A stretch of DNA of 64,000 nucleotides from Monocercomonoides exilis PA203. Taxonomy: Eukaryota; Protista; Preaxostyla. Location of the stretch: the NCBI GenBank assembly GCA_001643675.2, contig LSRY02000011.1, positions 1,302,001 to 1,366,000 of the forward strand, read 5' to 3'. Under the pieces are notes generated by a model. That model saw only the letters and a list, made by a program, of their open reading frames with translations, was not told the origin of the DNA and did not search any database. The translations under genes were made by a program, and so were the position numbers. Shown piece after piece: positions 14,014 through 57,144 of this stretch (positions are counted from its first letter, which is position 1; each line of letters opens with the position of its first letter).

Positions 14014-15462
14014 GGCATGAGCAGAATATACGCGTACCTCTCAAATTAGCTTGAAACTTTTGTGAATGATTTATTATTAATTGTTATTAACATATGTGCA
14101 AACCTGACCTTGCGTAAACGAGTTGTTGATAAATTATGAATTTTTTATTTTGGCAATTTTTTCTCAAAAAATGGGTGAGATCAAAAATCTTTAATAAAAA
14201 AAATGTCAAAGATACCAGAAACAAAAGACGTGATCTCAAACATGAATTACTTGTTTGCTAATTTGGAACGTACTTGGAAGTGGATTTTCGAGCATAGACT
14301 TCTTCCTGATACTGGGGAATGAAAACACTGCAAATTGAAAAAACTATTGTGCAAAAGAGACAACGCATATTTTCTAAAGTGCAAAAAGTGCCTGAAAACT
14401 ACATCTGTATTAAAAGGAACAACATTATCAAAGGCAAAAACAACAGTTAATAAGATTATGCATGTGTTTCTGCTGTTTTGGCTGGAATTAAGCATTTAGC
14501 AAACTTGTTTTTTGTTATATCTGGATAGAAACACCGTTTCATACTATTATAATATTTGCAGGGAAGTTTGTGTTGATGTGCTATTCAAGAACCCAATAAA
14601 AATTGGAGGAGTGGGGAAGGAGGTGGAAATTGACGAAATGTTGTGGAGAAGAAGGAAATACAACAGAGGAAAAAGGAAAAAGCAAGTTTGGATTTTTGGT
14701 GGTGTAGAAAGATCTGAAGAACGTTACAAAAGATCTTTTATGGTGGTTGTTCCAAGCAGGAACAAGGAAACTCTACTAGCAGCTATCAAAAAGCACATTT
14801 TACCTCAAACAACTATATACAGCGATGAATGGAAGGCGTACAATTGTCTAGATGAAGAAGGTTTTATTCACAAAACTGTTTGCCATAAGAGACATTTTGT
14901 CAATCCGGAAAATAAATCAGTATATACAAACACAGCGGAAGGTTTTTGGGCGCATTTTCGGAAATTTCTTCCCAGATTTGGAATCCGAACAAGATTTCTA
15001 CAACAATATATAGCATCTTTCATTGTTCGTTCGATGGGTTTACTGACTTTTAATCAACTCGTAGAATCTGCAATTCATTTGAACATTGAAAACGAAGAAA
15101 TGGTTGCAGAGGAAGAAGAAAATGATCCAGAAAAGGCTAACGAAGAGGAAGAAATCCCTGATATGGATAATCTTCCTGATGATGACACAGATTTTGGTGC
15201 AGATGATGGAGCAGACGCATCAGAATGGTCTGATGACTAATTCTTTTTAACGATTTCATACACTTTTTAGAAAATAAAAAATAATTAAAAAATATTTTCA
15301 CCCATTTTTTTATTCAAAATTTGCAAAAAAAATTATTCATAAAAATACAACAAGCTATTTGCGCAAGATAAAAATACGATAGAATGATCGAGTATTACAA
15401 CACCTTTCGTCATGTCGATTATGAAGTGTTTTCTTTAGGTACGCGTATATTCTGCATTTGCC
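14014..15462 (+). mobile_element. Merlin (IS1595/ISXO2-like) DNA transposon, 1449 bp
   Basis: 8-bp TSD AAATCTCT at 14006-14013 and 15463-15470; 26-bp TIR GGCA(TGA/AAT)GCAGAATATACGCGTACCT. Confidence 0.93.
14203..15240 (+). pseudogene. Merlin DDE transposase interrupted by two in-frame stops
   Basis: ATG 14203 is in frame with ORF 14512; TGA 14320 (in a xKHC, Cys-like position) and TAG 14497; intact motifs VEIDE, WIFGGVER, IYSDEWKAY, HKTVCH, YTNTAEGFW. Confidence 0.88.
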
Positions 15463-29815: not shown

Positions 29816-32208
29816 TCACTTCTTTGCCGACTTCCCTTCTTCCTCAGTCGCACCAGCCCCCGGCAGATCCAGTGTGAACGATTCACTTCTTCTGGTTCCT
29901 GCGCCTGCTGTCTTTGTACCCGCAGCTTTCGTCGAAGGAGAAGAAAGGCGGGCGGACGCTGTGCTGGGCGGGCTGGCGGAGGGTGTTTTGAACTGCTGGT
30001 CGCTTGAGAGGCGGCGGAGATATGTTGATACTCTCTTTCTCCCAAAGGCAAGCGACTCAGCTGACTCGTCCTCGTCGCTTTTCTTTGCATCTGAAGAAGA
30101 AGAAGAAGAGGAGGAAGAGGACGATGAAGGTGTTGCGGAAGAAGAGGAGGAGGAAGAAGGAGAAGAACCATCTTTGCCTTTCGAAGACGTGCCATATGTC
30201 AGCTCCTTCGCTGCCTTCTCAGCTGCCGAGTCGCTCTTCGTAGAAGGTCTTGCCAAGTTCGGCTTATCGACTTCCATCGCCCTCTGGAACGAGGAAAGCG
30301 CCTCTCTGATGGCTGTCTTCCCTCCAAGCAGCAGCCCCTTTTGCAGTGTGCCGTCTGAAAAGCCCTTCAAAAGCACAACTGCCTCATTTTCTTGCCTGAG
30401 TGTCTGGAACATGCCACACAGACGAGCAACTGCGTGGATTTTGGTGGTGATCTCCCCACGGCGCGCTGCCAGTGATGTGTCTTTGTCTTCGCCTTCGCCG
30501 GGTGCTGATGTTGAGAAGAAGAAGAATGATTGTGAAAAAAGCAGCAAAATTTAATAGGGAAAGATATGATGAACAGATATAAGCAAAGAAGAAATAATTG
30601 ATATAAATGAATTGTGATAATTAAAGAAAGAAAGAGAGATAGCCTAAATATGCAGACTTGAGCAGAACTTGAGTATTTCCAGGAGCATGGATGCGATGTT
30701 CTCCGCTACGTAAGGGAGAGAGAGATGGAAGACGTCGATGAAGTTGGGCAAGAAATACGGGTGGGGCGAGGCAGAGAACTGTCTGAAGTGGATTTTCTCT
30801 TTCTTCACAAGCAGAATGGCAGCCTGGTTTTTGAAGGAGTCCACATAATTGGGGCAAGAAAACAGGGTGATGACAGTCGGGAAGGGGTTTGTGCCGGAAC
30901 GAGGGAATTGCATTTCGAATCCTGTGTCTTTGCATTCGTGGCCACGCACAAGAGCCACAAGAGAGTTGGCTCGGAGAAACTGGCGGACGGCGGTTGCTCT
31001 GAGAACAGGGAGAAAAAAAAAATAGATAAATGAGAGGTGGAACGGATGAAGAGGACAAGGATATATTCAACAGATAAATGATTAAGCAAGTTAATTTTTA
31101 AATAGAAACATTTCAAAATACAAACCCGTAATAATACGAGCAATTTCTTGCAGAATTATCAATGAAAGTGACTGTGTTTGAAGGATCAAGCTCTGCTGGA
31201 ACTGGATCAGACCACAGCATGTCTGTCACCATTCCTGTGTCCGGAATCTCTCTGAACCTGTTGATGCCATTAAGAGCATCAATCTGAAGAAACAAAAGTT
31301 AAACGTGAATTGAATAAAGTTTTACAAAGAATTATAAAAGAATTCATAAAAAACGCAATCCAACCTTTTTCAACTGAGGTGATATTCCTGCATGCACGCA
31401 AAAGAATCTCTTTTCTCCAATTAAAGCAGCAAATGGCATTGTATCGAAAACAGACAAGAAAGCATAGTACACATCACTGTTATATTTGTAAATACCTACA
31501 AAAATATAAAAAATAAAAGATTACAATAAAAATAAATAAGTATAGCAAACATTCACGCTTGAAGTTGAAATGTTCGGTGAGGTGTTTGCTTTCATGGTTC
31601 CCACGAATCATGAAAAAGCTTGTTGGATAGTTAATTTTCAAAGCAAGCATGTGAATAAGAAGTTCACATCCAAAAAATCCACGATCCACATAATCTCCGA
31701 GGAACAAATATGAAAACTCGGAAGGATCTCCACCAACTTCAAGCAACTTTAGAAAGTCATAATAAGATCCTTTAATTATAAAGAATAAATATTTTTTTTT
31801 TATCACAAGAAAAAAAAAAATATGAACATGGCAAATTATATTGCAATTCAAATGTGCAATCGATAAAGTAAATCAAAGTTCAAGAACAATGAATATAACG
31901 ACACTTTTTAAAATACAAAACAAACCATGAAGATCTCCAGCAACTCGAACTTCTCCGCTAATATCAAGCACATTAGGTTCTGTTCTGAAAATTTGTGCAG
32001 CCATGTTGACTATAGTTGTAATGTCCGAAATGTTAATTCTACCCTCTCTTACAAAGTGTTCCTTTAAAGCAGGGATATTGATTTTATTTGGAGCCATGAA
32101 CAGGACGGAATGGTCCAAAATATCTTTTGCTGGTTCAGGAACATCTGAGCAAGGACGGCTAATTGTGTCAAAAGATTCACCAATGTCGACTGCTGGAGCA
32201 GAAGTCAT
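29816..32208 (-). CDS. Calcineurin A (PP2B catalytic subunit), multi-exon
   Basis: [39 protein letters not shown]; CnB-binding [21 protein letters not shown]; CaM-binding [16 protein letters not shown]; autoinhibitory-like [12 protein letters not shown]. Confidence 0.93.
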
Positions 32209-32268
32209 GAAAATAAAACAATTTTAAATATTATGTTATGCATTTGATCGTAATAATTAAAAAAGTAA

Positions 32269-32951: not shown

Positions 32952-35900
32952 TTACGCCTTGTGCTGTCCATGAATTAATTTCCTATGGAACAAATCGTGA
33001 TGTGGTTGAATAACTTTTCCATCGTGATCTAATACTGAGATCGCAACTGCAGCAATAAGAAGAAACAAAAGGACCACGAAAAGAATCCATTTAATCGTGC
33101 GCTTAACTCTCTTTTTCCGAGGAACCCAGCGTGGGCGTGTGGTTGCAGGAGTGTAAGTTGTTTCTCCGGTTTCAGCCAATTCGGCTTTTCGCTTCAAAAT
33201 TAGATCGTATTCTTCCTTCAAAACATCCGCCGCCCACTTCAGCTGCTCTCTTGTATGTGATGCTGAAATAAAGAAGCGAATTCTAGCCTTTCCTTCCTCG
33301 ACAGCTGGAGCGTAATATGGTGAGGCTTCTATTCCACGGTAGTGGATGGCTTGCGCGAGTCTAAGAGTTTCTTCTGAAGTATGCACGATTGCAGGAACAA
33401 CCGCAACACCAATAGCATCACCCACATCAAACCCACGTTCAACCAGCAAATCTCTGAAGTACAAAGAATTATCCTGCAACTTTCGCACTCTCCACGGCTC
33501 CTTCTTCATCACCTCAAGCGCTCCCAAAGCAGCTCCTGCCTGTGCAGGTGGCATTCCAGCAGAGTAAATGAATCCGGGTGAAGTTCCTCGCAAAAACGTG
33601 ATTAACTCCTGCTTCCCTGCGATATAACCACCACACGAAGCAAACGATTTTGAGAGTGTGCCCATCCACAAATCAACATCTGAAGGGTCGATGCCGAAAT
33701 GCTCTCCAATTCCTCTTCCAGTTTTGCCCATCGTTCCAATTGAATGTGCTTCATCAATGAAAAGAAGGCAATGGTGCTTTTTCTTCAGCTCAATCAGTTC
33801 TGGAAGACGGCAAGCATCTCCATCCATAGAATACACACCTTCAGCCACAATCAGGCACTTCCTGTGTTTTGTTCTGTTTTCAGTTAAAATTGCGTCCAAG
33901 GCTTCTGTGTTGTTGTGCGGGAAGGAAATTGTTGTTGAGTGAGAGTTCTTGTTACCTTGGATGATTGACGAGTGGCACAGCACATCATACACAATAAGAT
34001 CACTTTCCTTCATCAAATGGCCGATTGTGGATTCATTCGCCATGAAGCCACCAACATACAAAATCGCGTCCTCAGCGCCAACCCACCAGGCCAGTCCTCT
34101 TTCCAGCTGGTAGTGAATGATACGTGTCCCTCCCACAACACGCGATCCAGAGACAGACGTTCCATAGCGAGCAATCGCATTTTGTGCAAATCGCTGGACA
34201 CGCTTGTCTCCAGAAAGGGAAAGATAGTTGTACGAAGTAAAGTTGATGAAGTCTTTGCCTTCCATTTGTGTTTCGTCATCATTCACACCGTCGTTGATAC
34301 GCAGATATGGCATATCATTATCCACAATCGATTTCATGAAGTCCAATCGTCTTGTTTCTTTGACGACTTCAGGCAATTTCTCAATCACATACAAATCTTC
34401 AGTCATCACGTATTCTTTTTCCTTTTTCCCTTTCTTTCCTTTTCCGTGTCCGCTGCTTCCGCTGGGATGTCCTGTGATCTTTTCAGACAGATCTTCAGCA
34501 GCTGAGCGAATAGAATCATACTTAGCAAGTGCCTGTGCAGAGACTTCAAACCCAACGATGGATGAAAGTGATGATGCAATGCTGATGGATGCATTGGAAT
34601 CAAGCCCAACATCACCAAGTGACAGATCATCAGTAAGATTCTCTGGCAAGTCTGACACATTCTGACGGAGCAGATCAATGATGATATCTGACATGCGATC
34701 TGCATTCATCATTGAATCATCGTCATCATCATCGCTGTCTGAATCAGATGAGTCGCCGCTGCTTCTCCTATGAGAGCGATGGCTGTGAGACTTCCTTTTC
34801 ATCTGACTGCTTCTGCTTCGTTTGCTCACCTTAACTTTGGCTGAGGCGATTTCTTCATCTCCGCTCTCTTCGTCATCAAACAGCACTTGCATGACATCAA
34901 TCTCACTTTCGCTGAGTTTGCTGGCTCCTCTAACATTAAGGACAGGATGAGTGAATGTAATTTCTTTGTCCTTTGAAGACTTAGCAGATTCTTTATTTGC
35001 TTTTCCTTTTTTGATTGCAATTTGTGTGGCGTTGTCTTCCACGTCTGCTTGTTTCAATGAAGTTTCAATGCGAAGAATGTGCTTTCCACCAGATGAGAAG
35101 CTTGGCAGAGTCACCTGCTTGGCTGGTGCAACAAGATGTGCGACCATCGAAGGCGCAGAAAGGAACGGCAAAATTGGAGACGCTACTGCTTTGGCTGAGA
35201 CACCAGGTGTTTGAAGTGCCAGATCTGTGCGGAGCATTCCTTGTGTTGTCTTTCCCACACGCGACCAGTCAACATGGCACACGACAAGCTGTGAATGGAT
35301 CATTCTTGGCGCGACTGTACCGTCAGAGCGGGGCAGTAAAGAGAGAGGAATCGCAATATCTTCATTCTGATCATCGCTTGAGATGTCATAGTCGCCTCTC
35401 TTCAGTGTCAATGCTTCGCTCACAAACCGTTCCATGACTTTCAGAGCATCGCTGATTTCAAGTGGAAGGACACCTTCTTTTGCCAGCTGTGGAAGAAGAT
35501 CATTGTTTGCTCTCTTTGAAGAGAACATACCTGCATTTGTTGGACCAAGATTAAGTGAGAGGTAAAGTGGAGAGGAAGGCACAGAAGATTCAGAAGTGTA
35601 AGGTTGATGAGAAGATGCTGCAATCGAATCGAAGAATGCATTTGCTGCAGAATAAGTTGCCTGTCCAACTGAACCAAACAGTGAGGCAATTGAAGAAAAC
35701 ATCAGCACAAATTCGCACTTCGCTCTGTCTTTTTGCTTCATTCCATCGATTGCTGCTTTGATGTTGATAAGTCCGAGCACTTTTGGTTGCATAACAGCGT
35801 CAATATCTTCCTTTGTGGCTTCAACAAACAGTGAATCTCTGAGTAATCCTGCTGTGTGGATAACACCTCTCATACAGCCAAATCTTTCATCGTTCAGCAA

Positions 35901-38900
35901 GTTTTTGATCATCTTGCGAACGGGATATTCCTGTGTCAGATCGCACTTGATCACTTCGATGATTGCCTTCTCGTGAGGATGAGCGGTGTTATAGTTGACT
36001 CCCACCTCTTCCAGTCGGTGTGCTGCTTCTGGTCTGTCTGTACGTGAAAAGATGTCGCTGCATACGATTCTTTTTGCTCCGTTTGCGAGTAACCACTCAA
36101 CAACACACAGTGCAACGCCACCAAGTCCACCAGTGACGAGATAGAAGCCATCAGAGTGGAAGAGTTGTGAATGAATAGAAGTTGAAGAAGATGCAGAAGA
36201 TGAAGGAGATGATATTGTGATTGGAGGATGAAGCGGTGAAGGTGTCTGAAGAGGCGATGAAGCAGGCACGCGATACATTCTTGGAGAAAAGCGTGTGCCA
36301 TCTGCAGCAATTGCCACTTCAACCTCAGTTCTGGTCTTCTCCTGCACTGCCATTGTGGCGATGGATGTTGGGTGGATCAGCAAGAACTCGCGTAGAACCG
36401 TTTCATCTGACGATTGTGCGATTTGGTCTTTTTCAATCTTCAGCTGACTGACAGAATCGCGCGAGGGAAGATCCAACAGCCCAACTCTGAAAGTGGCTGA
36501 CATTTCCCGAGCGACCACTCGCCCCAATCCCCAGAGCATTCCCTGAACTGTTGTGGCAATATCTTTCAAATTCACTTTCACAAGTGACTTATTCTGTTCA
36601 CTTGACTCATCTTCACTTCCTTCTTCCTCTTCCTCTTCTTCTTCTTCCTCACTTGAATCATCGACTTCTGATTCGTGTTCATCCCAGCTTGACTGCTGGT
36701 GAGTTCCTTTCTTCACAACTGATGTGTTGCTGATCTCATTCGAATGAAGTCCTCTCGTAACCAACATGAACGGAGCAGGTTTCTTCCTTATTCCTGCTTC
36801 GAGCGACGTGATCGTCTTGAGGATTCTCTGTGGAGTGTTTGTGGTGAATGAGGAAACAACCTCAAACAGTGATGAATAATCTAATGACTCACGCTGCTCT
36901 TTTGTGAAGATCGTCGCCTGGTCTCTTTCAGAAATAAGAAGAGATGGATTGTGAGGCAGATCAAGACACCACATGTATATCACACCAAGCAATGGAAGTG
37001 TTTTTGGAGCTGAAGAAGAAGATGATGATGAAGACGAAGCTGAAGCTGACTTTGGTGCAGCGCTGCTCTGGTCGTGCATAGCTGCAATGATTGCTTCACG
37101 CACAGACTCATCGCGCATTGGATTGGCGTAAATGACTCTGATCGAAGAAGACTGATTGCCAACTTTGAATGTATATTGCGTTTCTTTCCCATCTGCAATT
37201 GCATCTGCTACGTTCTGAATTGCAGATGAATCTTGTTTTCTCTGCTTTGACTTCGATTTCATTGGAGGAGCAGCCGATGCCTGGCTAAGCGGATCGACGT
37301 GGTTTGAACGAATGACAATCACTTTCCCGTTCTTCTTCATCATCTGCAGCTGCTTTGCAACATTTATGCCGTCTTCGCTTTCAGCTTCCGCAAACACCAG
37401 CCACACACCTTTTTCATCATCTGCTTCGTGATGCAATGGTGCCAGTGCTTCACTCAACGGTGCATCTTTCTTCTTGTTCTCTGCCTGTTTCCCAAGCTGA
37501 GCCTCGCCCCACTCAAGTGAATACAACGCCTGTCCAATTGTGCTGTTCCAGCCGTCTGTCACATTCTGCTTCATTTGCTGTTCAGTTGCGCGGCGCACTG
37601 TGAAGTTGTGGAGCACGCAAATCAATTCCATTTGAGAATCTGCTTGAGGAGCCGATGGCTTCACTGGTGAAGCAAACACCTCTTTCCTTTTGACTGTAAC
37701 AGAATCATCAGAAGGAGAAGAAGAAGATGATGATGAAACGGCCACGATTGAAAGGTCAGCCGATATCTCTTCCGGTGGTTGAGTTCCTTCGATGTTTGTG
37801 AGCTGTGGCGAATGAACATGGACATACAGCTCTTTCTCTTCCACACCTTCGAGGAAGGCTGATCTGAACAGCTGGACTGACTCTATCTTTGTTGGAAGAT
37901 AGAGACATGGGTTCAATTCTTCTTCCTCCTCGTCTTCTTCTTCTTCTTCAACTTTCTTCTTTCCTTTTCCTTTCTGGTCTTTCTTTGCCTGCTTTGGTGA
38001 TTTCTTGTCGTCGTGGAAGACAAGACTGAGTGCAGCAACAGCGTGGAAAGACGCATCCAACAGAGCAGGGTGGATGAAGAAGGACTCTGCATTTGGAGTC
38101 TGCTTCGCACGGGTCGTGTCCAGCACAGCCAAAACCTCGTCTCTGCAGAACGAGATGGAGGACACGCCTTGGAAGTGGTATCCGTAGTTGAGTCCAGCAC
38201 GTGAGAACAGAGTGTAAAGTGCGAAGGCTGGCAGACTGGATGCCTTGCAGCGCTTACGTACATCGCTGAGGGAGACTGATGGATCGACACCAAGCAGAGG
38301 AAGGGTCGACAGGATGGAGGAGAGAGAGGCTAATGAAGAACTGGAGGCAGACGAAGAGGCAGAAGCAGACAGTTGAGGAATTGCTAATCCCTCACCAGCC
38401 ACACTACCTGGATGCATTGCAGGGCTCATTGCTGCATCGAGAGCATCAGCGCCTTCTGGAATGATCACAGCGCTGGCGTGAGTTGTCCAGAGATGTGATG
38501 GAAGATTGGCTGCTGCTGATTTATGGAGCATCGCAGCATTCTGTGCATCTCCTCTGCTGCGAGGATGTCTCAAACGAGCTGCGATCTTCACAGTTCCCAT
38601 TCCCATTGGAAGATCAGAAGAGGATGAAGAAACAGAAGAAGACGATTCTTCGTATGAGGCCTTCAGGCGGATTTGGCGTTGGAGGCCAAGAGTCAGCATG
38701 CGGTTGAAAGTGACAGATGTCAGATGAAGAGGAGATGCTGAGTTTAAAATAACAAAATATTACATTAAAATAAAAATATAAAAAAATTCAAATGAAGAAA
38801 ATGAAACTTAAAAATTTAAAATAATTTAACAACAGAATACCTTTTCCTCTTTTCGATGTGAATTGTGATGGGTGAGTGATTTGTGCGTTTCTAGCAGCAA

Positions 38901-41900
38901 CAGCAAGCATCATTTCAACATAAGCAGCGCCAGGAAGAACAGATCCTCCCAACAATCCATGCTCCAACAAGAACGAAGTGGGTTGAGAAGTGTAAAGTGC
39001 AGGTATCGGAGAAATAGCAGGGGACGGAGAATTAGGAGATGATGGCTTAATATCGTGCATGTCAAATAGTCCCTTCCACGTGGCTGAGAAATTGGATGAA
39101 TCAACAGCCGCCTTTGGTAGTAATGGGTGTGTTGTGTCTTCCCAGTGCTTTTCTTTCCTCAGCGAAGGCGATCCAGCGCTTCCCTCAGCCGGGTCAAAGC
39201 CAGCAAACGGTCTCAACCGCGCGCCTCTCCTTCTGTGCCTCCTCTGTGAATCCTCATTGTCGCTGTCCTCCTCAGACTCATCGTCGCTCTCTTCGTCAAC
39301 GTTGTACCAGCAGAACTGGCCGTTCCACTGATAACTTGGAGTCAATGTGCAGTATGAAGCGTGCTGGGACATGAGAACGTTTGGGGAGTCCCAGTTGATG
39401 CTGAAGCCAGCACAGAACAGTCGCCCAATTGCGCGTCGGATGAATGAAAGCTCGTCTTGCTTCACTTTCATTGTGGATACAACAAACAGAGGCGAAGATG
39501 CAGCTGACAGGAACGCTGCGGAAACAGGCTGTCTCTTCTGCATCTGGTTTTTGCCTTTCCTTTTGTCTTGTGCAGCAGACATTTTTGCCTCGTTCTTCTT
39601 CTTCTCCCACTCCTGGAAGTTCTGCTGGATGGCTGAATTGAGCACTGGTTGTGATGCTACCTCGACGAATGCCTTGTGCCCGTCGTCGATCATCGTCTTC
39701 AGCGCCTCGCCAAATCTGACACACGAGCGGATCTGTGCTGCCCAGTAGTCAACAGTCAGCTGCTTTGACGGGTCTTCTATCTTTTTGCAGAGTGTGGACG
39801 AGTAAAACGGAATGGCGTATGAAGAGAAGAAGTGAGCTGGAGAATAGCCGTTGGCATTTCCAGCGGATGGGGTGGATGAATGCGACAATGGAGTGATTTG
39901 AGGGAAGTGCTCCACAAACGAGGGAAGAATTGACTGCATCGCTGCGCTGTGGAAAGCATACTCCACACGGACATTCTGCACAGTCAGCGGCTCTTCATCA
40001 TCGTCATCATTGCTGTTATTGGCATTTGCTGCTTTGCTCTTTTTCTCTCCTTCCTCTTCTTCTTTTCCGTTCGATCCATCTTTTTGCTCTTTCTTCTGTT
40101 GTGCTTTCTCCTTTCTGAGTGCATTTTGGATGTATTCAATGCACCTTCCCACGCTGTTTTCGTCTCCAGACAGAACCATCGTGTGCTCGCTGTTGATTGT
40201 TGCAACAGACACAGAATCAGGATTTGGATCAACAGAAGCAGACACTGACAGTGATTCAGTGTTACTTTCAGAATGCTTCTTTGATTTAGCGCCTTCCTTT
40301 TTGGAGGATTTTGAGTGATGTTGTGTGCTTTGTTCTTCGGCTGATGAATCTTCTGCTTCCATTCCTTTCTCTTTCCTGTTCCATTCCTTCACAAGATGCT
40401 CAACTTTCTTTCCGTTCAGCTCCACACCGCCAGATGACAGCTGCCTCATAACACCTTTTGGCGCCTGCTGCATCGCCAGCCCGCGATGGCACACAAGCTT
40501 CACTGCGTCTTCCAGAGAGAGAGCACCGCTGATGTGAGCTGCAGCTATTTCTCCGATGGAGTGGCCCACAACAGCGGATGGAATGATACCCCATTCACGA
40601 AGCAGGCGGCACAATGATACTTGGATGGTAAACAGAGCTGGCTGGGCAATGCATGTGTCAGCTAATGTCAGAGGATGAGATGGCAGAGGAAGTGTGGTGG
40701 ATGAAACAAGAGGAGATGATGCTTCGGTTGATTGGCTGCGCTTCTGCTTCTTTGAAGGAGTCGAAGGAGAAGCTGATTCTTTCTTCTTTGGTGTGTCTGG
40801 TGAGTTCATCTTTGGCGATGATTTTTTGGGTGTTGCTGGAGAATCGTCGCGTCTTGACTTCTTCTTTTTCGAGGTTGTTTGTTCGTGTGAAGACTCAGAT
40901 GAATCTGGTGTCTGGCTAACGTGTCTCTCACGTTTTCCTTTGCTTTGTGTTTGTTCTTCTTCTTCTTCTTCTTTCTCTTCTTCTTTCGGCTTGGCAGCAG
41001 AAACTTGCTCGGCAGACTGATTTTCCACAGTAGATGGGTCCTTCGCAAAGAAGTCGAGAATGGAGATGCCGCCCAGATGCTTCTTGATCAGTCTGTCAAT
41101 CTCCAAGCAGCTCTGTCTGAACACTGGCTCCTCTTTGAACAGGTGGAATGCCATGTCCGGACGCTGGGCGCCTTGCCCCGAAAAGATGAATGCAGGTCCC
41201 GTTGATGCGTTTGGCACAAAGCTCATCACGGCTTCAGAATTGTTTGAAGCTGATCCCTTTTTCTTTCCAGCTGAAAGAGACAGCTCTTTCATCTCGTCCA
41301 GAACAGCCTGAGGAAGTGGCTGGACTCCGCTGAGTGTCTGTGAAAATGTCTTCGATTTGGCAATCTCCTGCAACTCTTTGATAGCTTCAGTGTGAGTTGA
41401 GAACACAGCTGTTGCTCTGTATGGAGCCAATGCCTCGCGCTTCTGTGCAGCTGAGTAGCACAAATCGCGCAGGAACTTCAGAATGGAGCTGAGAGCTGCT
41501 GGCGGAATTTCGGGGTCTGTGCGAGATGATGATGATGAGGATGTCTCAAGTGAAGGAGTAATTGAAGGTGATGGGGATGGGGATGGAGATGGTGTGGGTG
41601 AAGGAAGAAGAGGAGGAGAAGGAGACGGTGCAGGAAACGGAGATGCTTCATCAGATGAGCCATTCTTCTTCATCGCAATTGTTGCCTGTCTGATTGCCTG
41701 TGATGCAAATCGGTTGATTGTGTCAGCGTATGAATGAGCCAACGCACACAGCGAAGCAGACGAGCGTGCAGAAAGTGGAAGAATAAATCTTGAAGGGATT
41801 TCCTCCAGTTCTGATTCAGCCAACTCTGCTGCCGGCTCGTTCTGCACCTCGCGCTTCCGCAGAGACGGCGGGCAGTCAGCCACAATTGCATGAGCATTCG

Positions 41901-44900
41901 TCCCACCGAAGCCAAACGCACTTAAAGCGCACACTCTCCGGAGGCAATTCTCGTTGTTGGCATCGCCACGTGGCTTGGCGCTCCACACCTGGTTCGTGTC
42001 CTGCACTTTCACATGCAGCCGCTCAAAGTCGATGTGTGGGTTTGGCTGTTGGAAGTGCAGCGACCGCACAAACATCCCGTTGTGGAGGCAGAGCGACACT
42101 TTGACAAGACTTGCAACACCAGCTGCTCCTTCGAGATGGCCAATGTTCGTTTTCACAGATCCCACACGCAATGGATTTGGCTCGCTGGAGGCGCTCTTCG
42201 TCGCTCGCAGCTTCTTTGCGTAGACAGTTGCCAGTGCTTCCACTTCAATTGGATCACCCAATTTGGTTCCAGTTCCGTGGCATTCGACGTAATCGATGTC
42301 TGAGCCGCTGCGAACAATCCTCGCTCCGTTCTCGTCTCTGACGTGTGATGCGTCTTTGAGGCACTGACGAAGCAGCATCTCTTGTGAAAGTGGAGACGGA
42401 GCTGTCAGACCATTGGATTTCCCGTCCTGGTTGACTGCTGTGGCGAGGAGAACTGAATAAATGCGGTCTCCATCAGCGACAGCGCGTGAAAGAGGCTTCA
42501 GGAATACCACTCCGCACCCTTCTGATCGCACATACCCGTTTGCTCTTGAGTCGAATGTTTTGCAGCGCCCGTCAGGTGACATGAAGTTGGCGTGCGACAT
42601 CGACACAGTCACAGCAGGATTGAGGATAAGACTGACACCACCAGCAACAGCAGCAGAGCATTCGCCCCGGCGGATGGCGTCCATAGCCAGATGCACTGCG
42701 ACAAGAGAAGAGGAGCAGGCAGTATCCACAACCATTGAGGGTCCTACAAATCCGAATGAGTAGCTCACTCTGTTTGCAAGAATGGAGAGCGCTGAGCCAG
42801 TTCCTGTGTAGCTGTCACACATCTCCACTTCCTTCATCTGCAGCGAGCTGTAATCAGAGCCCGTGCATCCGAAATACACACCCACATTCTTTCCTTTCAG
42901 CGACGATGGAACGACTCCGCTGTCTTCGAGTGCCTCCCACACGCACTGCAGTGCCAGACGCTGCTGTGGGTCCATACGGCTCGCCTCAGCAGCAGAGATT
43001 GAGAAGAAGTTGTAGTCAAAAGTGCACACCGATCTCCCGTCGATGAAACCTCCCCATTTTGTGCTCATTTTGCCTGAGCCAGATGCGGTGGGGGTTTCTC
43101 CGGTGCCGTCGTAGTACTCTTCCACAGACCAGCGATCAGCTGGCACTTCTGTGATGGAGTCGACGCCTCTCATCAGATTCTGCCAGAACTGCTTCGGAGA
43201 CGAGGCTCCGGGGAAGCGCAGGGCCATACCGCACACTGCAATTGGCTCAGAATACGCGCTCTGAGAAGCTGACGAGGCAGAAGTGTCTTCCTCATCGGCA
43301 TCAGCTTCTGCAGCTTCGGCTTCCTGTTGCGCTTCGTCTTCGTTTCTCTCCGAAATTGCCTTTTTGACCTCGTCGATCAAGAACGGGGCAAGCTCAGTGA
43401 TTGAAGGATATGAATACGCGACAGTCGGTGAAACCGTAATTTTGAGTACTTTTTCCAGTTCTCCAGCGAGCGGAACGGCTTCCACAGACTTCACTCCGAT
43501 GACTGAGAAGTTTGTGTTATCTTCAATGATCGAAGGATCTCCAATCTCCAACTCATTTGCAAGAACAATTCGAATGAATTGGCAAAGAGATTCTTTCTTT
43601 GGAACCTTCAGCTGAGCAGAATCAGAAGCAGAAGACGATGAAGATGCAGAAGATGTTTGGATCTCGTCCTCATCCCATTCAATCGCTGGAAGCGGAAGAG
43701 TAACAAACTCATATTGGTCGTTTGATCCTTTTCCCTTCTGACCAGCCAGTCCATGTGCTCCTTTCAACCGCCCTGCTCCGTATTCTGCTGAGCCTGTGCC
43801 CACCCATTCGTGGACAACAGCACCATCCTCTTTGAACTTCCCCATTTTCAGCCCAAGTTCTTTCACTTGGCTTCGCTGGATCTTTCCAGAAGATGTTTTG
43901 TATATTGAGCCTTGCTTCAGCAGCACTACGCGATTCACAGCAACATCAACCTCCTTCGCCACTGAGGCCACAATCAGCTCCACCAGCTTAGGATACTCAG
44001 TTGCTGGGCATGTGTCGCGTACTTCCTGCACAACGGTGATGTTCTCTTCTTCTGTTTCCTCAGCTTTGATCTCTTCGGCTCCCCCAGCTTTCTTTCCTTT
44101 CTTTTTTCCCTTTCCACTCTCTGCTTTTTTCCCTGCTTTGTCTGCCTCTTCGTTGTCGAGGATCTTTTTCATAGAAACGGTAAGGGAAACAGCAGCAGAG
44201 CAGCCTGGTCGCAGGTGAGGAGATGCATCTTCGCTTGCTCTTTCAATGTCCATCGGATAGACATTGTGGCCGTGAATGATAATCATATCCTTCAGCCTCC
44301 CAGACACGAACAGGTGCCTGTCGTACACAAACCCCAGATCGCCTGTTCTGAGGAACGGGCCTCTGCCATCAGCAGTGTAGCAGCAGAACGCCCGCTCTGT
44401 CATTTCTGGCTCTCTGAAGTATCCCTTTGCCACAGAGCTTGATTGGATCCAGATTTCGCCCACTCGATCGGGTGGTCGCTCTGCGTTCGTTGCGGGGTCC
44501 ACAATCAGAACAGTCCATCCGATTGGGTCAGGTATCCGATTCTGTGCTGCAGTAACAGGTCCGCAAATGTATCCAGTTCCAACCAGCTCTATTGAGTCGT
44601 CTTCCTCGTCTTCCTCGTCCTCGTCATCGTCATCATCGTCTTCGCTCTCATCATCTTCTTTCTTTTTCTTTTTGTCTGCTACTGCTTTGCCTCCGTTGGC
44701 CAATGCAACAACTCTATGATCAGAAAGAGCACTTTTGCTGAATGTGTAGACTGGCATACCATGTGATGATGTTACCATCAATGTTGTCTCTGCCATCCCA
44801 AAGCAAGGTGTAAAGTGTCCTCCAAATCCAAACTTTGCAAATCTCTCGTTGAAGCGTCGCAAAGTCCTTGCCCTAACTGGCTCGCTACCGTTGAAAGCAT

Positions 44901-45810
44901 TGTGCCAGTTTGAGAGATCAATTTTCTTCGACACAAGCTCCTCGTCTTTCACTTTTCTCAATACCAAATCGTATCCAAAGTTTGGCCCACCACCAGAATA
45001 GGCTTTCGTGACAGAAAGCAGTTCTATCCATCGAATGGGCGATTTTAAAAAGTCTAGAGGTGACATAAATGTGATATAGCCTCCTAGATAGACTAACTGA
45101 AGAATTTGTCCTATCAGTCCCATATCGTGATATTGTGGAAGCCACCCAGCTGCAGAAATTTCAGGATATTCATCATAAAATTTATGCTTAAATTCACGAT
45201 AAATGTGTCGTTCATTTTCCATAAGATTATCATGAGTTACCATGACACCTTTTGGATCGCTTGTTGAGCCTGATGTGTATTGCAAAAATGCAATTGTATC
45301 TTTTGTGATGTGAGGTTTTTTGTAACTTTCTGCCTTTGAATCAGGAATAGAATCAACAGTAATCCATGTAGCAGTTTTGAAAGATGGGAACAAATGAAAC
45401 ACGCCAGAAGACAATTCTTTCATGTCACTTGTTGTAACAATGATAGTAGCACCTGATTTCGTCATAATTGCTTCCAAACGTTTTAATGATTGATGCATCC
45501 TTGATGGATCAGGAGGATAAACAGGAACTCCAATAACTCCAGCAAACATACAAGAAAGATATGCAACAAGAAAATCAGCACTTGGTGGAAACAAAAGGAT
45601 TGCTGAATAACCATATGCACCGCACTCATTCAGAACGGATCCTACAGCACGACATCTGGTTAGGAGCTGTGAAAATGTGTATTGTGAGATCTTTCCATTG
45701 AGATCGCCTGTATGAAGGAATCTGATGGCAGGGTGATTTGGCCTTGCTAAAGCACGTTGTTCTATGACTTCAACAAAAGTTTCTTCTTCACCGATTTTGT
45801 GCAAAGCCAT
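32952..45810 (-). CDS. Giant type I PKS-like protein FAAL-ACP-KS-AT-DH-KR-ACP-AONS/SPT(PLP)-TM, about 4251 aa; exons 45810-38841 and 38737-32952
   Basis: FAAL: FLQYTSGSTSDPKG, WLPQYHDMGLIG, FLRTGDLGF, KTSSGKIQR. ACP1 GVKS. KS: DTACSSS, HGTGT, KTNIGH. AT: GQGAQ, GHSIG, YAFHS. DH: HGLLGGSVLP, HPALLD. KR: TGGLGG, HTAGLLRD, YSAAN. ACP2 GLDS. AONS/SPT: SYNYL, EGVYSMDGD, DEAHS, GTLSK. TM WILFVVLLFLLIAAVAISVL. Phase-1 GT..CAG intron 38840-38738 joins the two ORFs in frame. Confidence 0.93.
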
Positions 45811-46834
45811 AGAAATAAGATCGAAGATCAGAACCAATATTACGAAGGTTTTTTTAAATACTAATTGATTGAGAAAAACATTTATAATATGAACGGTTGT
45901 GGTATTTTTCGTCAAACTACGATTATTGTGACAACAATGAGTTACTCCTTTTCCGTGCATAATTTCTGATTATTAAAAGGAAATTATTCATATCCAATGG
46001 ATGAAAAATAATATTCGGAAATTGTTCGAATATAATTTATATGTTGATATTGAAATTTGGAAAATAAAGAAGTTCATTTCAAATAATAATTGTATTTGAA
46101 AGAAGAGACACAAATTCTCATGTTTTTATTTGCAGGTTGAATAAACAAAAAATAGTAATTGCATTCAAAATAATGATCATGTGTTTATTGTTTTATCTTT
46201 TTCATAGGGATCTGTGACTTTTGAAGATATAACACATTTTTTTTTCTGTTGCATCGAAACGGTGTCTCAAACACAAGCGTTAAATTGTGTCAATGATATT
46301 TTTGTTTGTTTCAAATCTCTTCTGCAGATTTTGAATATTTTCTTTGACGGTACATATTTTTTATTTTATGTATATGAACAAAGTCTGGTTTAAGTACTGA
46401 TTCTCTCAAATAAATATTTTTTCAAAATTTGGCGAAATGCACAATCAAATCAAAAAATATTGCAATAATAAAAATTACTTTGACAAATAAATCTGGAGTT
46501 ATAGGGAAATTAATACATTTGAATTCTTGGTAATTAAAAGTTTCTGTTCCATCGAATTCACCTTACACTTGACCACAAAACAAGCCGTGAAGTGTTGCAT
46601 CCTTGAAGCAGATAACAATTAATCACAAAGTTTCCTACTCATAAATATTGTCATGCGTAAACAGTTCAATTTCCGTTGTTAAATGTTAAAGCTTATCGTT
46701 CAATATCGCTGTTAACGAATATCCAAATTCATTCAATAAAATATTGAAATAGAAAATTCTATCAAACGGTTCAATTTTTAGTGAACTTTTATTGATAGAT
46801 TCGTTTTGAAGCGAATTTCATAATGATGATAGCG

Positions 46835-48034
46835 TTAATTACCGATGTTAGCATCTTCACCATCTTCGTCTTCTCCGTCTTCATCTTCGTTATCTTCATC
46901 TTCACTTTCATCTTCATCTTCAAATTCAATTTCAATTGCAGGTTCTAAATCGAATTCTTCATCTTGCTTATGTACAATTGACTCCTCTGAAACCATCAAT
47001 TTCCTGCAAATCGGGCAGTGGACAATGCCCGCGTTAAACATCTCGTTCACACATTTTAGATGCATGTAGTGCCCACACGGAGCGCGCCAGCTGGGATGCC
47101 GCGTGGAGAACAAATCTTTGAAGCACACTGGACAGTTCTTTTTCATTGCATCAGGAATGCATTTGTGCCCTGCGGCAGTCGCAGCAAATAGGCACACGTT
47201 GCAGCCATCACAGTGGATTACTTCTTCTCGAGTACCCACTCGACAAAACCCGCCTAATTTTATAAAAAAAATGTTGGAAACAAAATATATGCAAATTTGA
47301 AGAAATAAAAAAAAAATAAAATAAATAAAAAAATAAAAAAAAAAATAACTCATACATTTATCGCAATGAAAAATTTTCATTAACGGATTTCCGTTTAAAA
47401 ATTTACATTTATCACAAAAGTATGTCGCAAATTCAATTCCACAGTGAGCGCATTGCCTTTGGAAAGGACCTATTTTTTTACACTTGTAACACCAAACTTT
47501 ATTTATTTTATATCTATCTATTTCATGATCAGCAATTTTATCGTGGCAAATTCTGCAAGGGAAAAATCGTTGACATTCTTCACAGCATATTTTGCACTCT
47601 CTTAGGTAATGTTTGCATCCATGAAAAACTCCTCCATCTATTGAGTGCCATTCTGGTTCTGCAGATTCATCCGTAGATGAATCAGATTTATCATCAGTTT
47701 TATTGCTTGAATTGTCGTCATTTGTTGTCGCACCTTCGTTGGAAGCATTTTCAATTCTCTGATCAGCTTTTTGTTCTCCAATATCCGGCCGTTGAATAAG
47801 TGGATTAATCTGTTCTGCATGAACATCGTGTACTGTATTACATTCTTCAGTTTTACATGTTTCTGAATCCTGTTTTTCTGTAGGCTGTGTTGGAGAAGAT
47901 GCCTTTGATTCTGAACCAAGGACAGTTTTAACTTCTTGAATGGCATCATTTTGAGTGAGTAATATCTTTCTTTCTTCGTTTTTTGTTGGTGTTAATTTTG
48001 AAGTAATGCATCCCTTACTGTTATACCATGACAC
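46835..48034 (-). CDS. RCHY1: RING finger and CHY zinc finger protein (Pirh2/RCHY1-like); 5' end uncertain, in-frame intron near 47258-47350
   Basis: GCKHYLRECKICCEECQRFFPCRICHD (CHY), YFCDKCKF..FHCDKC..CRVG..HCDGC (CTCHY), NCPVC..APCGHYMHLKC..CPICRK (RING-H2). Confidence 0.88.
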   Translation of the reverse strand: MSWYNSKGCITSKLTPTKNEERKILLTQNDAIQEVKTVLGSESKASSPTQPTEKQDSETCKTEECNTVHDVHAEQINPLIQRPDIGEQKADQRIENASNEGATTNDDNSSNKTDDKSDSSTDESAEPEWHSIDGGVFHGCKHYLRECKICCEECQRFFPCRICHDKIADHEIDRYKINKVWCYKCKKIGPFQRQCAHCGIEFATYFCDKCKFLNGNPLMKIFHCDKCMSYFFFYFFIYFIFFLFLQICIYFVSNIFFIKLGGFCRVGTREEVIHCDGCNVCLFAATAAGHKCIPDAMKKNCPVCFKDLFSTRHPSWRAPCGHYMHLKCVNEMFNAGIVHCPICRKLMVSEESIVHKQDEEFDLEPAIEIEFEDEDESEDEDNEDEDGEDEDGEDANIGN

Positions 48035-54808: not shown

Positions 54809-57144
54809 TTATAATATCAAAGAAACAATAATTGTTGAGGAAATTGTTCCAGCAAACAATCCAATGTTCAAAGATGCAGACATAAAACTACCTCCAATGA
54901 TCTTTTCTTTTTCATCCGTGAGATCTTCGCAAGCCAGTGCCCTATCAAAATATTGAGACAAGAATAATTTAAGAAAAAACATATGAAATTATGTAAAGCG
55001 GAAAGTTATAATTTCATAAACATTTGTAAAGCATTTTCAAAAATTTGAAAAATGAATGTTTTGTTTTATGTAAAAAAACAAATTCTTTTTGCACACATTA
55101 TTAATGTTGAATGATAACCATTCGTAATTGCTAACAAAGATTGGAAAACAATGGGGTACCACAAATGTTGACATGACTCAATATATAATGATAAGAAAAG
55201 TAATGCAGCAATTACCTAAGTATTCACATATTTTAAATTGATATATCAAATAAAAACAAATTATTTATTTATTTAAGAAAGAAGAAGGAAAAAAAAGAAA
55301 GAGAAGAGTAATTTATATACGCGTATATGCACATTTGCACACATATAAAAGAAAATATTAATTCTCAAATCAATAGCTCTTCAAAAAGTTCTCAGAGAAA
55401 TCTTTCTTTCATGAAAACATACCAATCTAAGTAGTGAAACAACGTTCATTGCAAGCACTGATTTATAAAGAGGAAAGCATGTGGGGAAGAACCGAACAGC
55501 AAAGTCAAGCACGTTAAAAATGTTCAACTTGATATTCTGAATTTAAAAAGCATGGAAAAAAAATGATCGTATTTTCAAAAGGGCATATATTTGCATTCAG
55601 CATGGAAAATTCAAGAATTAAAGACAACAATCCTTAAGATGTGTTCAAATTAGTATTCCAAAATGGAAAACTATAACGTAAATCAACTTCTCACATCAGC
55701 TCAAATAAAAATTCTAAAGAATAACTTTCATGCCGGTATCCCTCTCAAAATTAAATGCTTACGATACACACCGTCCACAATTCATGGCCCCATTCGTCTT
55801 CAAACATTCCTTTTGGAGGTGGGACTGCAATGATGATGTTTGGGAAGACAAGAAGCGAAACGAAAAAGCAAAGAAATCCCGACAATCCCCACCAAAATTT
55901 CTTTTTCGCGATATGAAACATCTGAATAAACTGAGAACGAAGAGAACCGCAAAGAGTTTCATTATTTGCAACAGTTAACGAAGAATTTGTGGAAGAAGGC
56001 GATGAAATCAAGGAAAGTTGACTATCTATTTGAAAAGATGAATCCAACAATGGAGAAGATGATTGAAGTATCTGATTATCCTCAATTTTTTGATGGCTGT
56101 CATAAGACGATTGAACTAGATTGTCAATATTTTCATTTTTCATTTCCTCTTCGTTCTTTATTTCCGATATCTGTTCATTTCTGCCATTCTTTCCTTCTAT
56201 AGGTTCAGAATTAACTTCTTCTTCCTTCAAATTCTCGCCATGCGTTTCTTCGTCACGTTTTGTATCGACCTCTAAACATGTCACGTCCAATACAGAAAGC
56301 TCAACTTCTTGAGCAGCTATCTTTCCATTTTGCTTTGCTTTCGTTTCTTCATTGATTTCGCTTCTAGCATCATCAACTCCAATTTTTTTTGATGATCGTA
56401 ACTTTTCCTTTGAATAAGGTAAAATTGTCAAAATCCAATAACCCACAAAAGCTAAGGCATTTATTACTGCTGAGAATGCAAAAAATATATATCCTATCAG
56501 ATCTGTGTTGTCTCCTGGCAACGAAATATGCAAAATTAACGGTACTAAACTTATTAATCCATCAAGAGCTTGGCCAATCATCGTTGATTGCGTGTGTAAA
56601 GGTGAAAGTTGACTTGAAAGCCCAAAAATCGTGACATTTAAACATCCAGTTATTATTCCGAGAAAAAACGAAAGAATAAGCATCAATACCACAGCAGCAA
56701 TGGTTCCATCGAGAAAGGTGCAAACAATTGGAATTATAATCATTATCAACACTGATATGAAAATTGGAATTGGGACTGCATAATTTCGATTAATGTGACC
56801 AGAAATTCCAGTGCAAATAAGTAAAGTAGGAAGTGATCCAACATGATAAGCAGCCAACATAAATGACATATTATTATTTCCAGGGAGCCTTTTCAAAAAG
56901 AAATTTGCCTTTGAAGCATGCAAAAATACAAGATTAGTTACATTTATTCAACGAATCATAGATTATATGGTAATTAAACATACAGAGCTTATTATTCCAT
57001 TCCATGCAGAAAGAACTGCCATTCCCAGAAGAGCACATAATATCTTTGTAAAATGAAACTTTTATAAAGTTGTTATAGAATTATACAAGTATTAGATCCT
57101 GATTATACTTTATCTGAATTAGCATTAGTTTTTATTTTTTTCAT
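54809..57144 (-). CDS. Equilibrative nucleoside transporter (ENT/SLC29 family), multi-exon
   Basis: TM1 ILCALLGMAVLSAWNGIISS; FGLSSQLSPLHTQSTMIGQALDG; large hydrophilic loop; FFVSLLVFP; ITNGYHST; final TM IGGSFMSASLNIGLFAGTISS*. Confidence 0.85.

What the first reader, a model, noticed from the sequence alone, without database searches (positions are those of the whole stretch)
35500..39130. DH+KR without ER: possible oxygen-independent route to trans-4 sphingosine
Seen: DH and KR (B-type-like LRD motif) are present, and I see no ER domain between them. Established: KR+DH without ER gives a trans-2-enoyl-ACP, and condensing trans-2-enoyl with serine gives 3-keto-sphing-4E-enine. In aerobes the delta-4 bond is made by the O2-dependent DES1 desaturase. 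Inference: C14 acid + malonyl + Ser would yield a d18:1(4E) skeleton directly, letting an anaerobic gut protist make unsaturated sphingoid bases without O2.
Basis: inference. Interest (0 to 1): 0.85.

Follow-up and report, generated by a model that had tools for sequence, protein, structure and literature searches.

The report
Oxymonad all-in-one sphingoid base synthase
This mitochondrion-less gut protist seems to have replaced the usual enzymes that start sphingolipid synthesis with one giant bacterial-type assembly-line protein that lacks the double-bond-removing step, so it may build the sphingosine double bond without oxygen; no one has yet measured the product.

Summary
Observation confirmed. 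The stretch is the DH-pseudoKR-KR part of one expressed, two-exon gene (45810-32952, minus strand, about 4,250 aa): FAAL-ACP-KS-AT-DH-KR-ACP-oxoamine synthase (AOS)-membrane anchor. DH His/Asp and KR LRD/K-S-Y-N motifs are intact. No ER: 131 aa between pseudoKR and KR landmarks against 460-511 in five ER-bearing paralogues. The Streblomastix strix orthologue keeps the same ER-less, DH-intact design. The genome (size matches Monocercomonoides exilis) holds no other AOS/SPT, no DES1 or SUR2 family gene and no stand-alone MDR reductase, but has a KDSR-like reductase and three Lag1-type ceramide synthases. So this is probably its only de novo source of sphingoid bases, and a directly built 4E bond is the simplest reading (about 0.5). 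Not supported: C14 preference (d20:1 from palmitate is as likely) and enrichment in anaerobes (ER-less bacterial relatives are cyanobacteria and Myxococcota). About ten steroid-reductase/TECR-family loci could still reduce the enone. Closest known: Pseudomonas PfSgaAB (PKS + AOS giving saturated sphinganines) and fungal sphingofungin/myriocin lines. The scan noted this same gene in another window and five paralogues elsewhere, not this delta-4 claim on other DNA.

The parts
32952..45810 (-). Whole gene, two exons, about 4,251 aa from the ATG at 45810 (an upstream in-frame ATG at 45960 exists; homology starts at residue 5 from 45810)
43830..45810 (-). FAAL (fatty acyl-AMP ligase) loading domain
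   Evidence: Pfam AMP-binding + DIP2-like; NCBIfam FAAL models; best PDB 7r7e-g E 4e-103
43387..43575 (-). Loading ACP; Ser kept but motif is GVKS instead of the usual GLDS (D in 86 of 92 homologous motifs)
   Evidence: Pfam PP-binding E 9e-7
41719..43248 (-). Ketosynthase, Cys-His-His intact (DTACSSS, HGTGT, NIGHLE)
39650..41190 (-). Acyltransferase, GHSIG and YAFH (malonyl-type fingerprint), with low-complexity insertions
   Evidence: same motifs in S. strix
38841..39129 (-). DH N-terminal part with catalytic His (38961-38959)
   Evidence: Pfam PKS_DH_N
38738..38840 (-). 103-nt GT-AG intron inside the DH domain, phase 1
   Evidence: joint 38737-38841 in RNA contigs of 4 runs
37590..38737 (-). 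DH C-terminal part with catalytic Asp (38057-38055)
   Evidence: Pfam PS-DH; PDB DH hits; model
36267..37412 (-). Structural pseudo-KR subdomain with acidic/Ser-rich insertions
   Evidence: alignment A1; model
36150..36266 (-). Short Ser/Pro-rich linker (about 40 aa) where an ER would be inserted; ER absent
35484..36149 (-). Catalytic KR, B-type LRD fingerprint, K-S-Y-N intact
34494..34682 (-). Module ACP (GLDS)
33210..34307 (-). PLP-dependent alpha-oxoamine synthase, SPT-like; all catalytic residues present; Ser at the amino-acid selectivity position
   Evidence: best PDB S. multivorum SPT 3a2b E 7e-75
33030..33089 (-). Single C-terminal transmembrane helix (tail anchor); also present in the S. 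strix orthologue
   Evidence: hydropathy 3.3

Best explanation
The gene is the organism's only de novo sphingoid-base synthase. The FAAL activates a ready-made long-chain fatty acid and loads it on ACP1; KS and the malonyl-type AT add one C2 unit; the B-type KR and DH turn it into a trans-2-enoyl chain on ACP2; with no ER the double bond stays; the fused, membrane-anchored AOS condenses it with L-serine and releases 3-keto-sphing-4E-enine. The separate KDSR-like enzyme reduces the ketone to a 4E base (d18:1 from C14, d20:1 from C16) and Lag1-type ceramide synthases N-acylate it. One protein would thus replace LCB1/LCB2 and the O2-dependent DES1. Shown: domain order, intact catalytic motifs, absence of ER, expression and splicing, conservation in a second oxymonad, gene content of the genome. 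Inferred: substrates, single turnover, product, fate of the enone.
For: Architecture and motifs. ER absent while five paralogues keep it. S. strix orthologue (AOS 66% identical) has AT-DH-KR-ACP-AOS on one contig, DH His and Asp, LRD, K-S-Y-N kept although flanking identity is near 30%, 148 aa between landmarks, no ER score: the DH is being maintained. Only one AOS-family gene in the genome, best solved relative an SPT, Ser at the selectivity position as in SPT and AONS rather than Val/Thr of glycine enzymes. KDSR-like L031, best PDB hit TSC10; three Lag1-motif TLC genes L011, L012, L014 (one M. exilis gene is annotated ceramide synthetase in PMC10703272 supplement); PPTase and acetyl-CoA carboxylase-like genes. 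No PF00487, PF08557, PF04116. Bacterial members of the same AOS group sit beside CerR-like epimerase (35 loci) and GNAT (34 loci) genes or KDSR-like SDRs, the gene types of bacterial ceramide synthesis (PMC9386255). A plain FAAL-ACP-AOS fusion, common in these bacteria (78 cases), would suffice for a saturated base, so keeping KS-AT-DH-KR without ER suggests that the modification is the point. PKS-fed SPT chemistry is proven for PfSgaAB (PMC12134224).
Against: No lipid data exist. No characterised AOS of this group; NCBIfam SPT cut-offs are not reached and Ser at the selectivity site does not separate serine from alanine. An enoyl thioester is a poorer Claisen electrophile and the product enone is a Michael acceptor (own knowledge). 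About ten PF02544 (TECR/steroid 5-alpha-reductase-like) loci could reduce it (not read). The loading ACP has K for the conserved D. No head-group enzymes of the usual families (PF14360, PF13506) and no sphingosine kinase, S1P-lyase family or alkaline ceramidase hits were found, so the downstream pathway is incomplete or divergent. Negative genome scans are exon by exon with a loose first filter and can miss intron-rich genes.
Confidence: 0.5

Rival explanations
1. Same synthase, but the double bond is removed in trans, on the ACP or after release, by a TECR/steroid-5-alpha-reductase-like or SDR enzyme, so the cell ends with saturated sphinganine and dihydroceramide; the PKS module only lengthens the chain.
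For: 15 PF02544 matches at about 10-12 loci; these families reduce alpha,beta-unsaturated carbonyls, and a delta-4 3-keto base is such a substrate (own knowledge); 35 SDR candidates, only 18 scored; most PKS-AOS relatives are fully reducing (102 KS-AT-DH-ER-KR-ACP-AOS) and PfSgaAB makes saturated bases (PMC12134224).
Against: No stand-alone MDR or FabK; TECR acts on CoA esters and has its own role in the elongase cycle; losing a cis ER only to replace it in trans, in two genera, is less economical.
Confidence: 0.17
2. The module is iterative or skips steps, giving conjugated di/polyene bases, 5-hydroxy bases (AOS captures the 3-hydroxyacyl-ACP before DH acts) or a shifted double bond.
For: PfSgaA is iterative (PMC12134224); fungal AOS-released PKSs leave programmed hydroxyls and alkenes (PMC13612406); sequence cannot tell iteration.
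Against: A dedicated FAAL-ACP loading didomain in front of one module is the usual sign of a single extension (established for OLS, RedL and cyanobacterial lipopeptide lines; own knowledge); DH catalytic pair is conserved in two genera.
Confidence: 0.13
3. The AOS uses another amino acid (alanine, glycine, cysteate) or the product is a specialised aminoketone/amino alcohol, not the backbone of membrane sphingolipids; ceramide synthases then only salvage bases taken from bacterial prey.
For: TIGR00858 BioF scores slightly above the SPT model (343 vs 326 bits); the same AOS group serves varied architectures, including RedL-like KS-only lines; no standard head-group transferases found; the culture contains Bacteroidota prey (PMC12308965).
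Against: KDSR is needed only for de novo synthesis and has no other 3-keto base source in this genome; best solved relative is SPT, cysteate acyltransferase is far lower (256 vs 173 bits); membrane anchor fits an ER-located SPT role.
Confidence: 0.12
4. Part of the line is vestigial (for example the loading ACP or the reductive domains), and the AOS works as a plain SPT on acyl-CoA or acyl-ACP without extension.
For: GVKS motif in ACP1; long low-complexity insertions; bacterial SPTs accept acyl-CoA (PMC12134224).
Against: All catalytic motifs of KS, AT, DH and KR are intact here, and those of AT, DH and KR in S. strix (KS and FAAL lie off that contig); insertions are a genome-wide trait.
Confidence: 0.08

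Closest known systems
PfSgaAB(C) of Pseudomonas fluorescens MYb115 (PMC12134224)
   Same: Type I PKS feeding an AOS with SPT activity, plus a KDSR-like reductase; makes sphingoid bases without a canonical SPT.
   Different: Separate proteins, iterative, saturated C24-C28 sphinganines, secondary metabolite of a bacterium; here one fused, membrane-anchored, FAAL-primed, ER-less protein that appears to be the only SPT-like gene of a eukaryote.
Fungal sphinganine-analogue lines: fumonisin Fum1/Fum8, sphingofungin SphB/SphA, myriocin MyrB/MyrA (PMC13612406)
   Same: PKS chain released by an AOS, then reduced by a KDSR homologue; PKS-made unsaturation is carried into a sphingoid-like product.
   Different: Highly reducing iterative PKSs with ER, AOS in trans using alanine or aminomalonate, toxins made beside an intact LCB1/LCB2 pathway.
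Uncharacterised bacterial FAAL/PKS/AOS family (cyanobacteria, Planctomycetota, Myxococcota, Acidobacteriota)
   Same: AOS 45-55% identical; identical full architecture in P0084 (3,018 aa); ER-less DH-KR end modules in Nostoc L129 and Microcystis L173 (the latter followed by a KDSR-like SDR).
   Different: No membrane tail or introns; most members are fully reducing or have no extension module; no product known; donor not resolved by the tree.
Canonical eukaryotic pathway LCB1/LCB2 + KDSR + CerS + DES1
   Same: Predicted end product (4E sphingoid base in ceramide); KDSR and Lag1 ceramide synthases are present.
   Different: LCB1/LCB2, ORM and DES1 not found; double bond would arise by dehydration before condensation, not by O2-dependent desaturation of dihydroceramide.
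RedL of undecylprodigiosin synthesis (from memory, not tested)
   Same: Acyl ligase-ACP-KS-AT-ACP-AOS on one chain, one extension then AOS release.
   Different: No KR or DH; beta-ketoacyl + glycine cyclises to an alkylpyrrole, which a reduced and dehydrated chain cannot do.

Membership tests
Partially reducing modular type I PKS module (KS-AT-DH-KR-ACP) | KS, AT, DH, KR, ACP in order with catalytic residues | tested here: met
Partially reducing modular type I PKS module (KS-AT-DH-KR-ACP) | No ER between pseudoKR and KR | tested here: met
Partially reducing modular type I PKS module (KS-AT-DH-KR-ACP) | Non-iterative action giving an E-enoyl-ACP | not testable with these tools
   B-type KR + DH usually gives E (established rule); needs assay
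Alpha-oxoamine synthase family | Fold type I PLP motifs: stacking His, D-x-x-H, T-x-x-K, C-terminal Arg | tested here: met
Serine palmitoyltransferase (functional) | Score above a curated SPT model cut-off | tested here: not met
   NF047600 326 of 640 bits; NF047599 265 of 500; NF047603 193 of 670: not a member of the named bacterial SPT equivalogs, though it may work like one
Serine palmitoyltransferase (functional) | Ser at the ThAOS-V79-equivalent selectivity position | tested here: inconclusive
   Ser present, but shared by SPT and AONS (PMC11906848)
Serine palmitoyltransferase (functional) | Condenses L-serine with a long-chain acyl thioester | not testable with these tools
   needs enzyme assay
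Eukaryotic LCB1/LCB2 SPT | Heterodimer of a Lys-bearing LCB2 and Lys-less LCB1, ORM-regulated | tested here: not met
   single bacterial-type domain; no second AOS gene; no ORMDL hit (control did not ring)
PfSgaAB-type PKS/AOS sphingolipid synthases | Type I PKS plus AOS plus KDSR-like SDR | tested here: met
   (KDSR unlinked, on another contig)
PfSgaAB-type PKS/AOS sphingolipid synthases | Orthology to SgaA/SgaB; iterative synthesis of saturated very-long-chain bases | not tested
   SgaA/SgaB sequences were not in hand; architecture differs (FAAL-primed, fused, ER-less)
FAAL loading domains | Best matches to FAAL, not acyl-CoA ligase, models; adjacent ACP | tested here: met
   Preaxostyla FAAL-PKS already listed in PMC12820801

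The most novel reading that the evidence does not exclude
Oxymonads have discarded both the canonical SPT and the oxygen-requiring dihydroceramide desaturase and make delta-4E sphingoid bases for their membranes with one horizontally acquired FAAL-PKS-AOS protein, the double bond coming from dehydration: an anaerobic route to sphingosine, analogous to anaerobic unsaturated fatty acid synthesis in bacteria.
Probability: 0.45. Interest if true: 0.87.

Novelty: new variant of a known kind. Interest (0 to 1): 0.74.

Why it matters
The 4E bond of sphingosine is made in known eukaryotes by DEGS1-type desaturases, which need oxygen. An intact, conserved, ER-less PKS fused to the only SPT-like domain of an anaerobic eukaryote gives a concrete, cheap-to-test candidate for an oxygen-free route. 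It would also be a eukaryote running a core membrane-lipid pathway on a bacterial secondary-metabolite-type assembly line. It corrects the picture of M. exilis lipid metabolism: the genome paper found no short-chain fatty acid synthesis and does not mention sphingolipids or polyketides (PMC6759080). It also gives a product hypothesis for a large uncharacterised bacterial family whose members vary only in the reductive domains before the AOS, and a possible single-enzyme route to sphingosine for biocatalysis.

Tried and rejected
Hidden or split ER: rejected (profile score, spacing, RNA contigs, orthologue). Bacterial contamination: rejected (spliced intron; eukaryotic neighbours, a CHY/RING gene and an intron-rich PPP phosphatase; intron-bearing orthologue in S. 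strix using the TAA/TAG=Gln code). Two separate genes: rejected (intron joins the ORFs in frame inside DH). Biotin synthase BioF: rejected as a function (fused to a long-chain FAAL-PKS); the name is a database default. Pyrrole-forming RedL chemistry: unlikely with intact KR and DH. Enrichment in anaerobes: not seen. Donor lineage: AOS tree unresolved, query on a long branch, careful search unfinished. Searches that led nowhere: exon-1 FAAL and exon-2 homologue searches found no protist relatives (length limits); representatives and metagenome scans gave only bacterial-type hits; an alignment query timed out; two papers on bacterial ceramide synthesis and Sorangium lipids were not held.
Full report
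What is there. The finding lies inside one gene on the minus strand. Two long ORFs (45960-38788 and 38699-32952) are joined by a 103-nt GT-AG intron at 38840-38738; the arithmetic keeps the frame and gives 4,251 aa from the ATG at 45810, and RNA contigs of four runs (one study) show exactly this joint. Pfam on the two ORFs gives AMP-binding, PP-binding, KS, AT, DH, KR, PP-binding and aminotransferase I/II; NCBIfam and PDB identify the first as a FAAL and the last as an alpha-oxoamine synthase. A strongly hydrophobic helix ends the protein. The genome is 82.3 Mb in 101 contigs, which matches my recollection of the Monocercomonoides exilis assembly; the orthologue in Streblomastix strix confirms an oxymonad. 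I searched exon by exon; the joined protein was not searched or folded.

The observation. DH has its His (HGLLGGSVLP, 38961) and Asp (HPALLDASFH, 38072-38043); KR has GGLGG, LRD, K, S, Y and N. ER is absent by four measures: no Pfam hit; an ER profile built from homologues scores -0.8 bits with filters off; the distance from the pseudoKR landmark to the KR nucleotide-binding motif is 131 aa, against 460-511 aa in five ER-bearing PKS/FAS genes of the same genome and 98 aa in an ER-less module of one of them; and the model, though weak overall (pLDDT 50), places the KR about 40 residues after the last pseudoKR strand, with the best query TM-score among the leading Foldseek hits going to the KS-AT-DH-KR module CalA3. 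Because paralogues keep ER, its absence here is specific to this gene.

Conservation. A length-matched search with the AOS end found a S. strix protein at 66% identity, far above all bacterial hits. Its contig carries AT, DH, KR, ACP and AOS in order, broken by the gene caller into three models. Read with TAA/TAG as Gln, it has GHSIG, YAFH, the DH His and Asp motifs, LRD (across an intron), K, S, Y, N, 148 stop-free residues between the two landmarks, and no ER score. Flanking identity is near 30%, so the DH and KR catalytic residues look selected for. KS and FAAL lie off that contig.

Genome context. This AOS is the only member of its family found: PF00155 gave nine matches, the others being Asp/Ala aminotransferase-like and lyase-like; the domain itself and a bacterial SPT model each found only this locus. 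No PF00487, PF08557 or PF04116 match, so no sign of DES1 or SUR2; no ORMDL (uninformative control). Present are a KDSR-like SDR whose best solved relative is TSC10 (L031), three TLC genes with the Lag1 HH/HD motifs (L011, L012, L014), an Sfp/AASDHPPT-type PPTase and three carboxyltransferase-bearing genes. All five MDR matches lie inside the other five PKS/FAS genes; no FabK. Against a clean story: about ten PF02544 loci, unread, could reduce an enoyl or enone; and the usual head-group and turnover families were not found, although eleven PF04488 glycosyltransferase matches exist. These negatives come from six-frame scans with a loose first filter.

Bacterial relatives. The AOS belongs to a large uncharacterised group (45-55% identity) in cyanobacteria, Planctomycetota, Acidobacteriota and Myxococcota. 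Architectures vary: 102 KS-AT-DH-ER-KR-ACP-AOS, 78 FAAL-ACP-AOS, 38 KS-AT-ACP-KR-DH-AOS, a handful of DH-KR forms without ER, and one exact match, P0084. Frequent neighbours are an NAD-dependent epimerase-type reductase (35 loci, including all nine KR-DH loci), a 400-aa GNAT (34 loci) and KDSR-like SDRs 36-38% identical to L031. These are the gene types of bacterial ceramide synthesis described for Caulobacter (PMC9386255, PMC11324152), though I could not test orthology. ER-less DH-KR forms are scattered over the tree (8 changes for 8 rows) and occur in Nostoc and Microcystis; the loci from Butyrivibrio, Clostridia and Syntrophobacteraceae have no KR or DH. So loss of ER is not an anaerobe signature in bacteria. 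The tree does not place the protist sequence (long branch, unfinished search); a bacterial origin is likely, the donor unknown.

Mechanism. By colinearity (established PKS rules): fatty acid to acyl-ACP1, one malonyl extension, B-type reduction and dehydration to trans-2-enoyl-ACP2, then PLP-dependent decarboxylative condensation and release. With serine this is 3-keto-sphing-4E-enine; KDSR and CerS finish a delta-4 ceramide with no desaturase. The AOS has every catalytic residue, and Ser at the position that governs amino-acid choice, as in SPT and AONS and unlike the glycine enzymes KBL and ALAS (PMC11906848). PKS-fed SPT activity is proven in PfSgaAB (PMC12134224), and SPT can carry trans-unsaturated acyl chains into bases (trans-9, PMC11765627). 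From memory and unchecked: early work on Hansenula reported use of trans-2-hexadecenoyl-CoA, and KtmB accepts an enoyl-CoA that is reduced after condensation, a precedent that cuts both ways. An argument from economy favours the delta-4 reading: a FAAL-ACP-AOS fusion would do for a saturated base. Chain length is open: palmitate would give d20:1.

Comparison and novelty. FAAL-PKS proteins in Paratrimastix and M. exilis were listed in a 2026 survey without function (PMC12820801), and UniRef names the S. strix fragment serine C-palmitoyltransferase automatically. The oxymonad genome papers do not mention sphingolipids in their main text. I found no paper describing this fusion, its status as sole SPT-like gene, or a dehydration route to the 4E bond; the library lacks most subscription papers. 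It works like PfSgaAB and the fungal SAM lines but is not shown to be a member of either, and it fails the curated SPT cut-offs. I class it as a new variant of a known kind.

Verdict. Observation confirmed; interpretation partly supported and strengthened by genome context and an orthologue. That the gene makes the cell's sphingoid bases: about 0.8. That the 4E bond is installed and kept: about 0.45-0.5. Interest 0.74.

Noticed in passing
G000 C2:1835520-1843544, C23:884264-892294, C31:868495-876255, C28:714808-726771, C28:1018564-1031481 (L023-L027, L035-L042): Five more giant type I PKS/FAS genes, all with ER: three single-module ones followed by an AT/MPT-like domain and two bimodular ones ending in a thioesterase-like domain, in an organism reported to lack short-chain fatty acid synthesis.
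   Followed up: partly
L031 (G000:C64:188389-189012): KDSR-like gene is 36-38% identical to cyanobacterial SDRs that sit directly after the AOS in PKS clusters (L173, L093, L158, L186); it may share the bacterial origin.
   Followed up: partly
L173:24-12021 (Microcystis) and L129:2187-11146 (Nostoc): ER-less PKS end modules followed by an AOS (and a KDSR-like SDR in Microcystis): predicted delta-4 (and 6-hydroxy) sphingoid-like amino alcohols in cyanobacteria; no product known to me.
   Followed up: partly
L150, L155, L177, L184, L193, L200, L204: Myxococcota-type FAAL + KS-AT-ACP-KR-DH-AOS clusters with an unusual domain order, no ER, always beside an epimerase-type reductase.
   Followed up: partly
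L153, L178, L179, L189: Rumen/gut Bacillota (Butyrivibrio, Clostridia) carry RedL-like FAAL-ACP-KS-(AT)-ACP-AOS proteins.
   Followed up: no
L017-L022 (G000 C5, C6): Three copies of a carboxyltransferase fused to a pyruvate-carboxylase-like domain, each match with one in-frame TAG (intron or break not checked); likely malonyl-CoA source.
   Followed up: no
G000, 15 PF02544 matches: Expanded TECR/steroid 5-alpha-reductase-like family, about ten loci.
   Followed up: no
window 31300-32210, minus strand: Intron-rich PPP-family phosphatase (GDLHG, GDYVDRG, RGNHE motifs; calcineurin A-like) begins about 740 nt downstream of the synthase stop.
   Followed up: no
window 46835-48034 (-), 9101-11233 (+), 55751-56923 (-), 59617-61545 (+), 14512-15240 (+): CHY/RING zinc-finger gene, TFIIS-central-domain gene, nucleoside transporter, HYLS1-C-domain protein, and an ISXO2-like (IS1595/Merlin-type) transposase.
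   Followed up: no
window 132-7409 (+) and 62026-63951 (-): A 2,425-aa and a 641-aa ORF with no Pfam match.
   Followed up: no
L211:779-12583: The S. strix orthologue is split into three annotated proteins because TAA/TAG=Gln and introns were mis-handled; it is one gene.
   Followed up: yes
window 43497-43477: Loading ACP motif reads GVKS, with Lys where 86 of 92 homologous motifs have Asp.
   Followed up: partly
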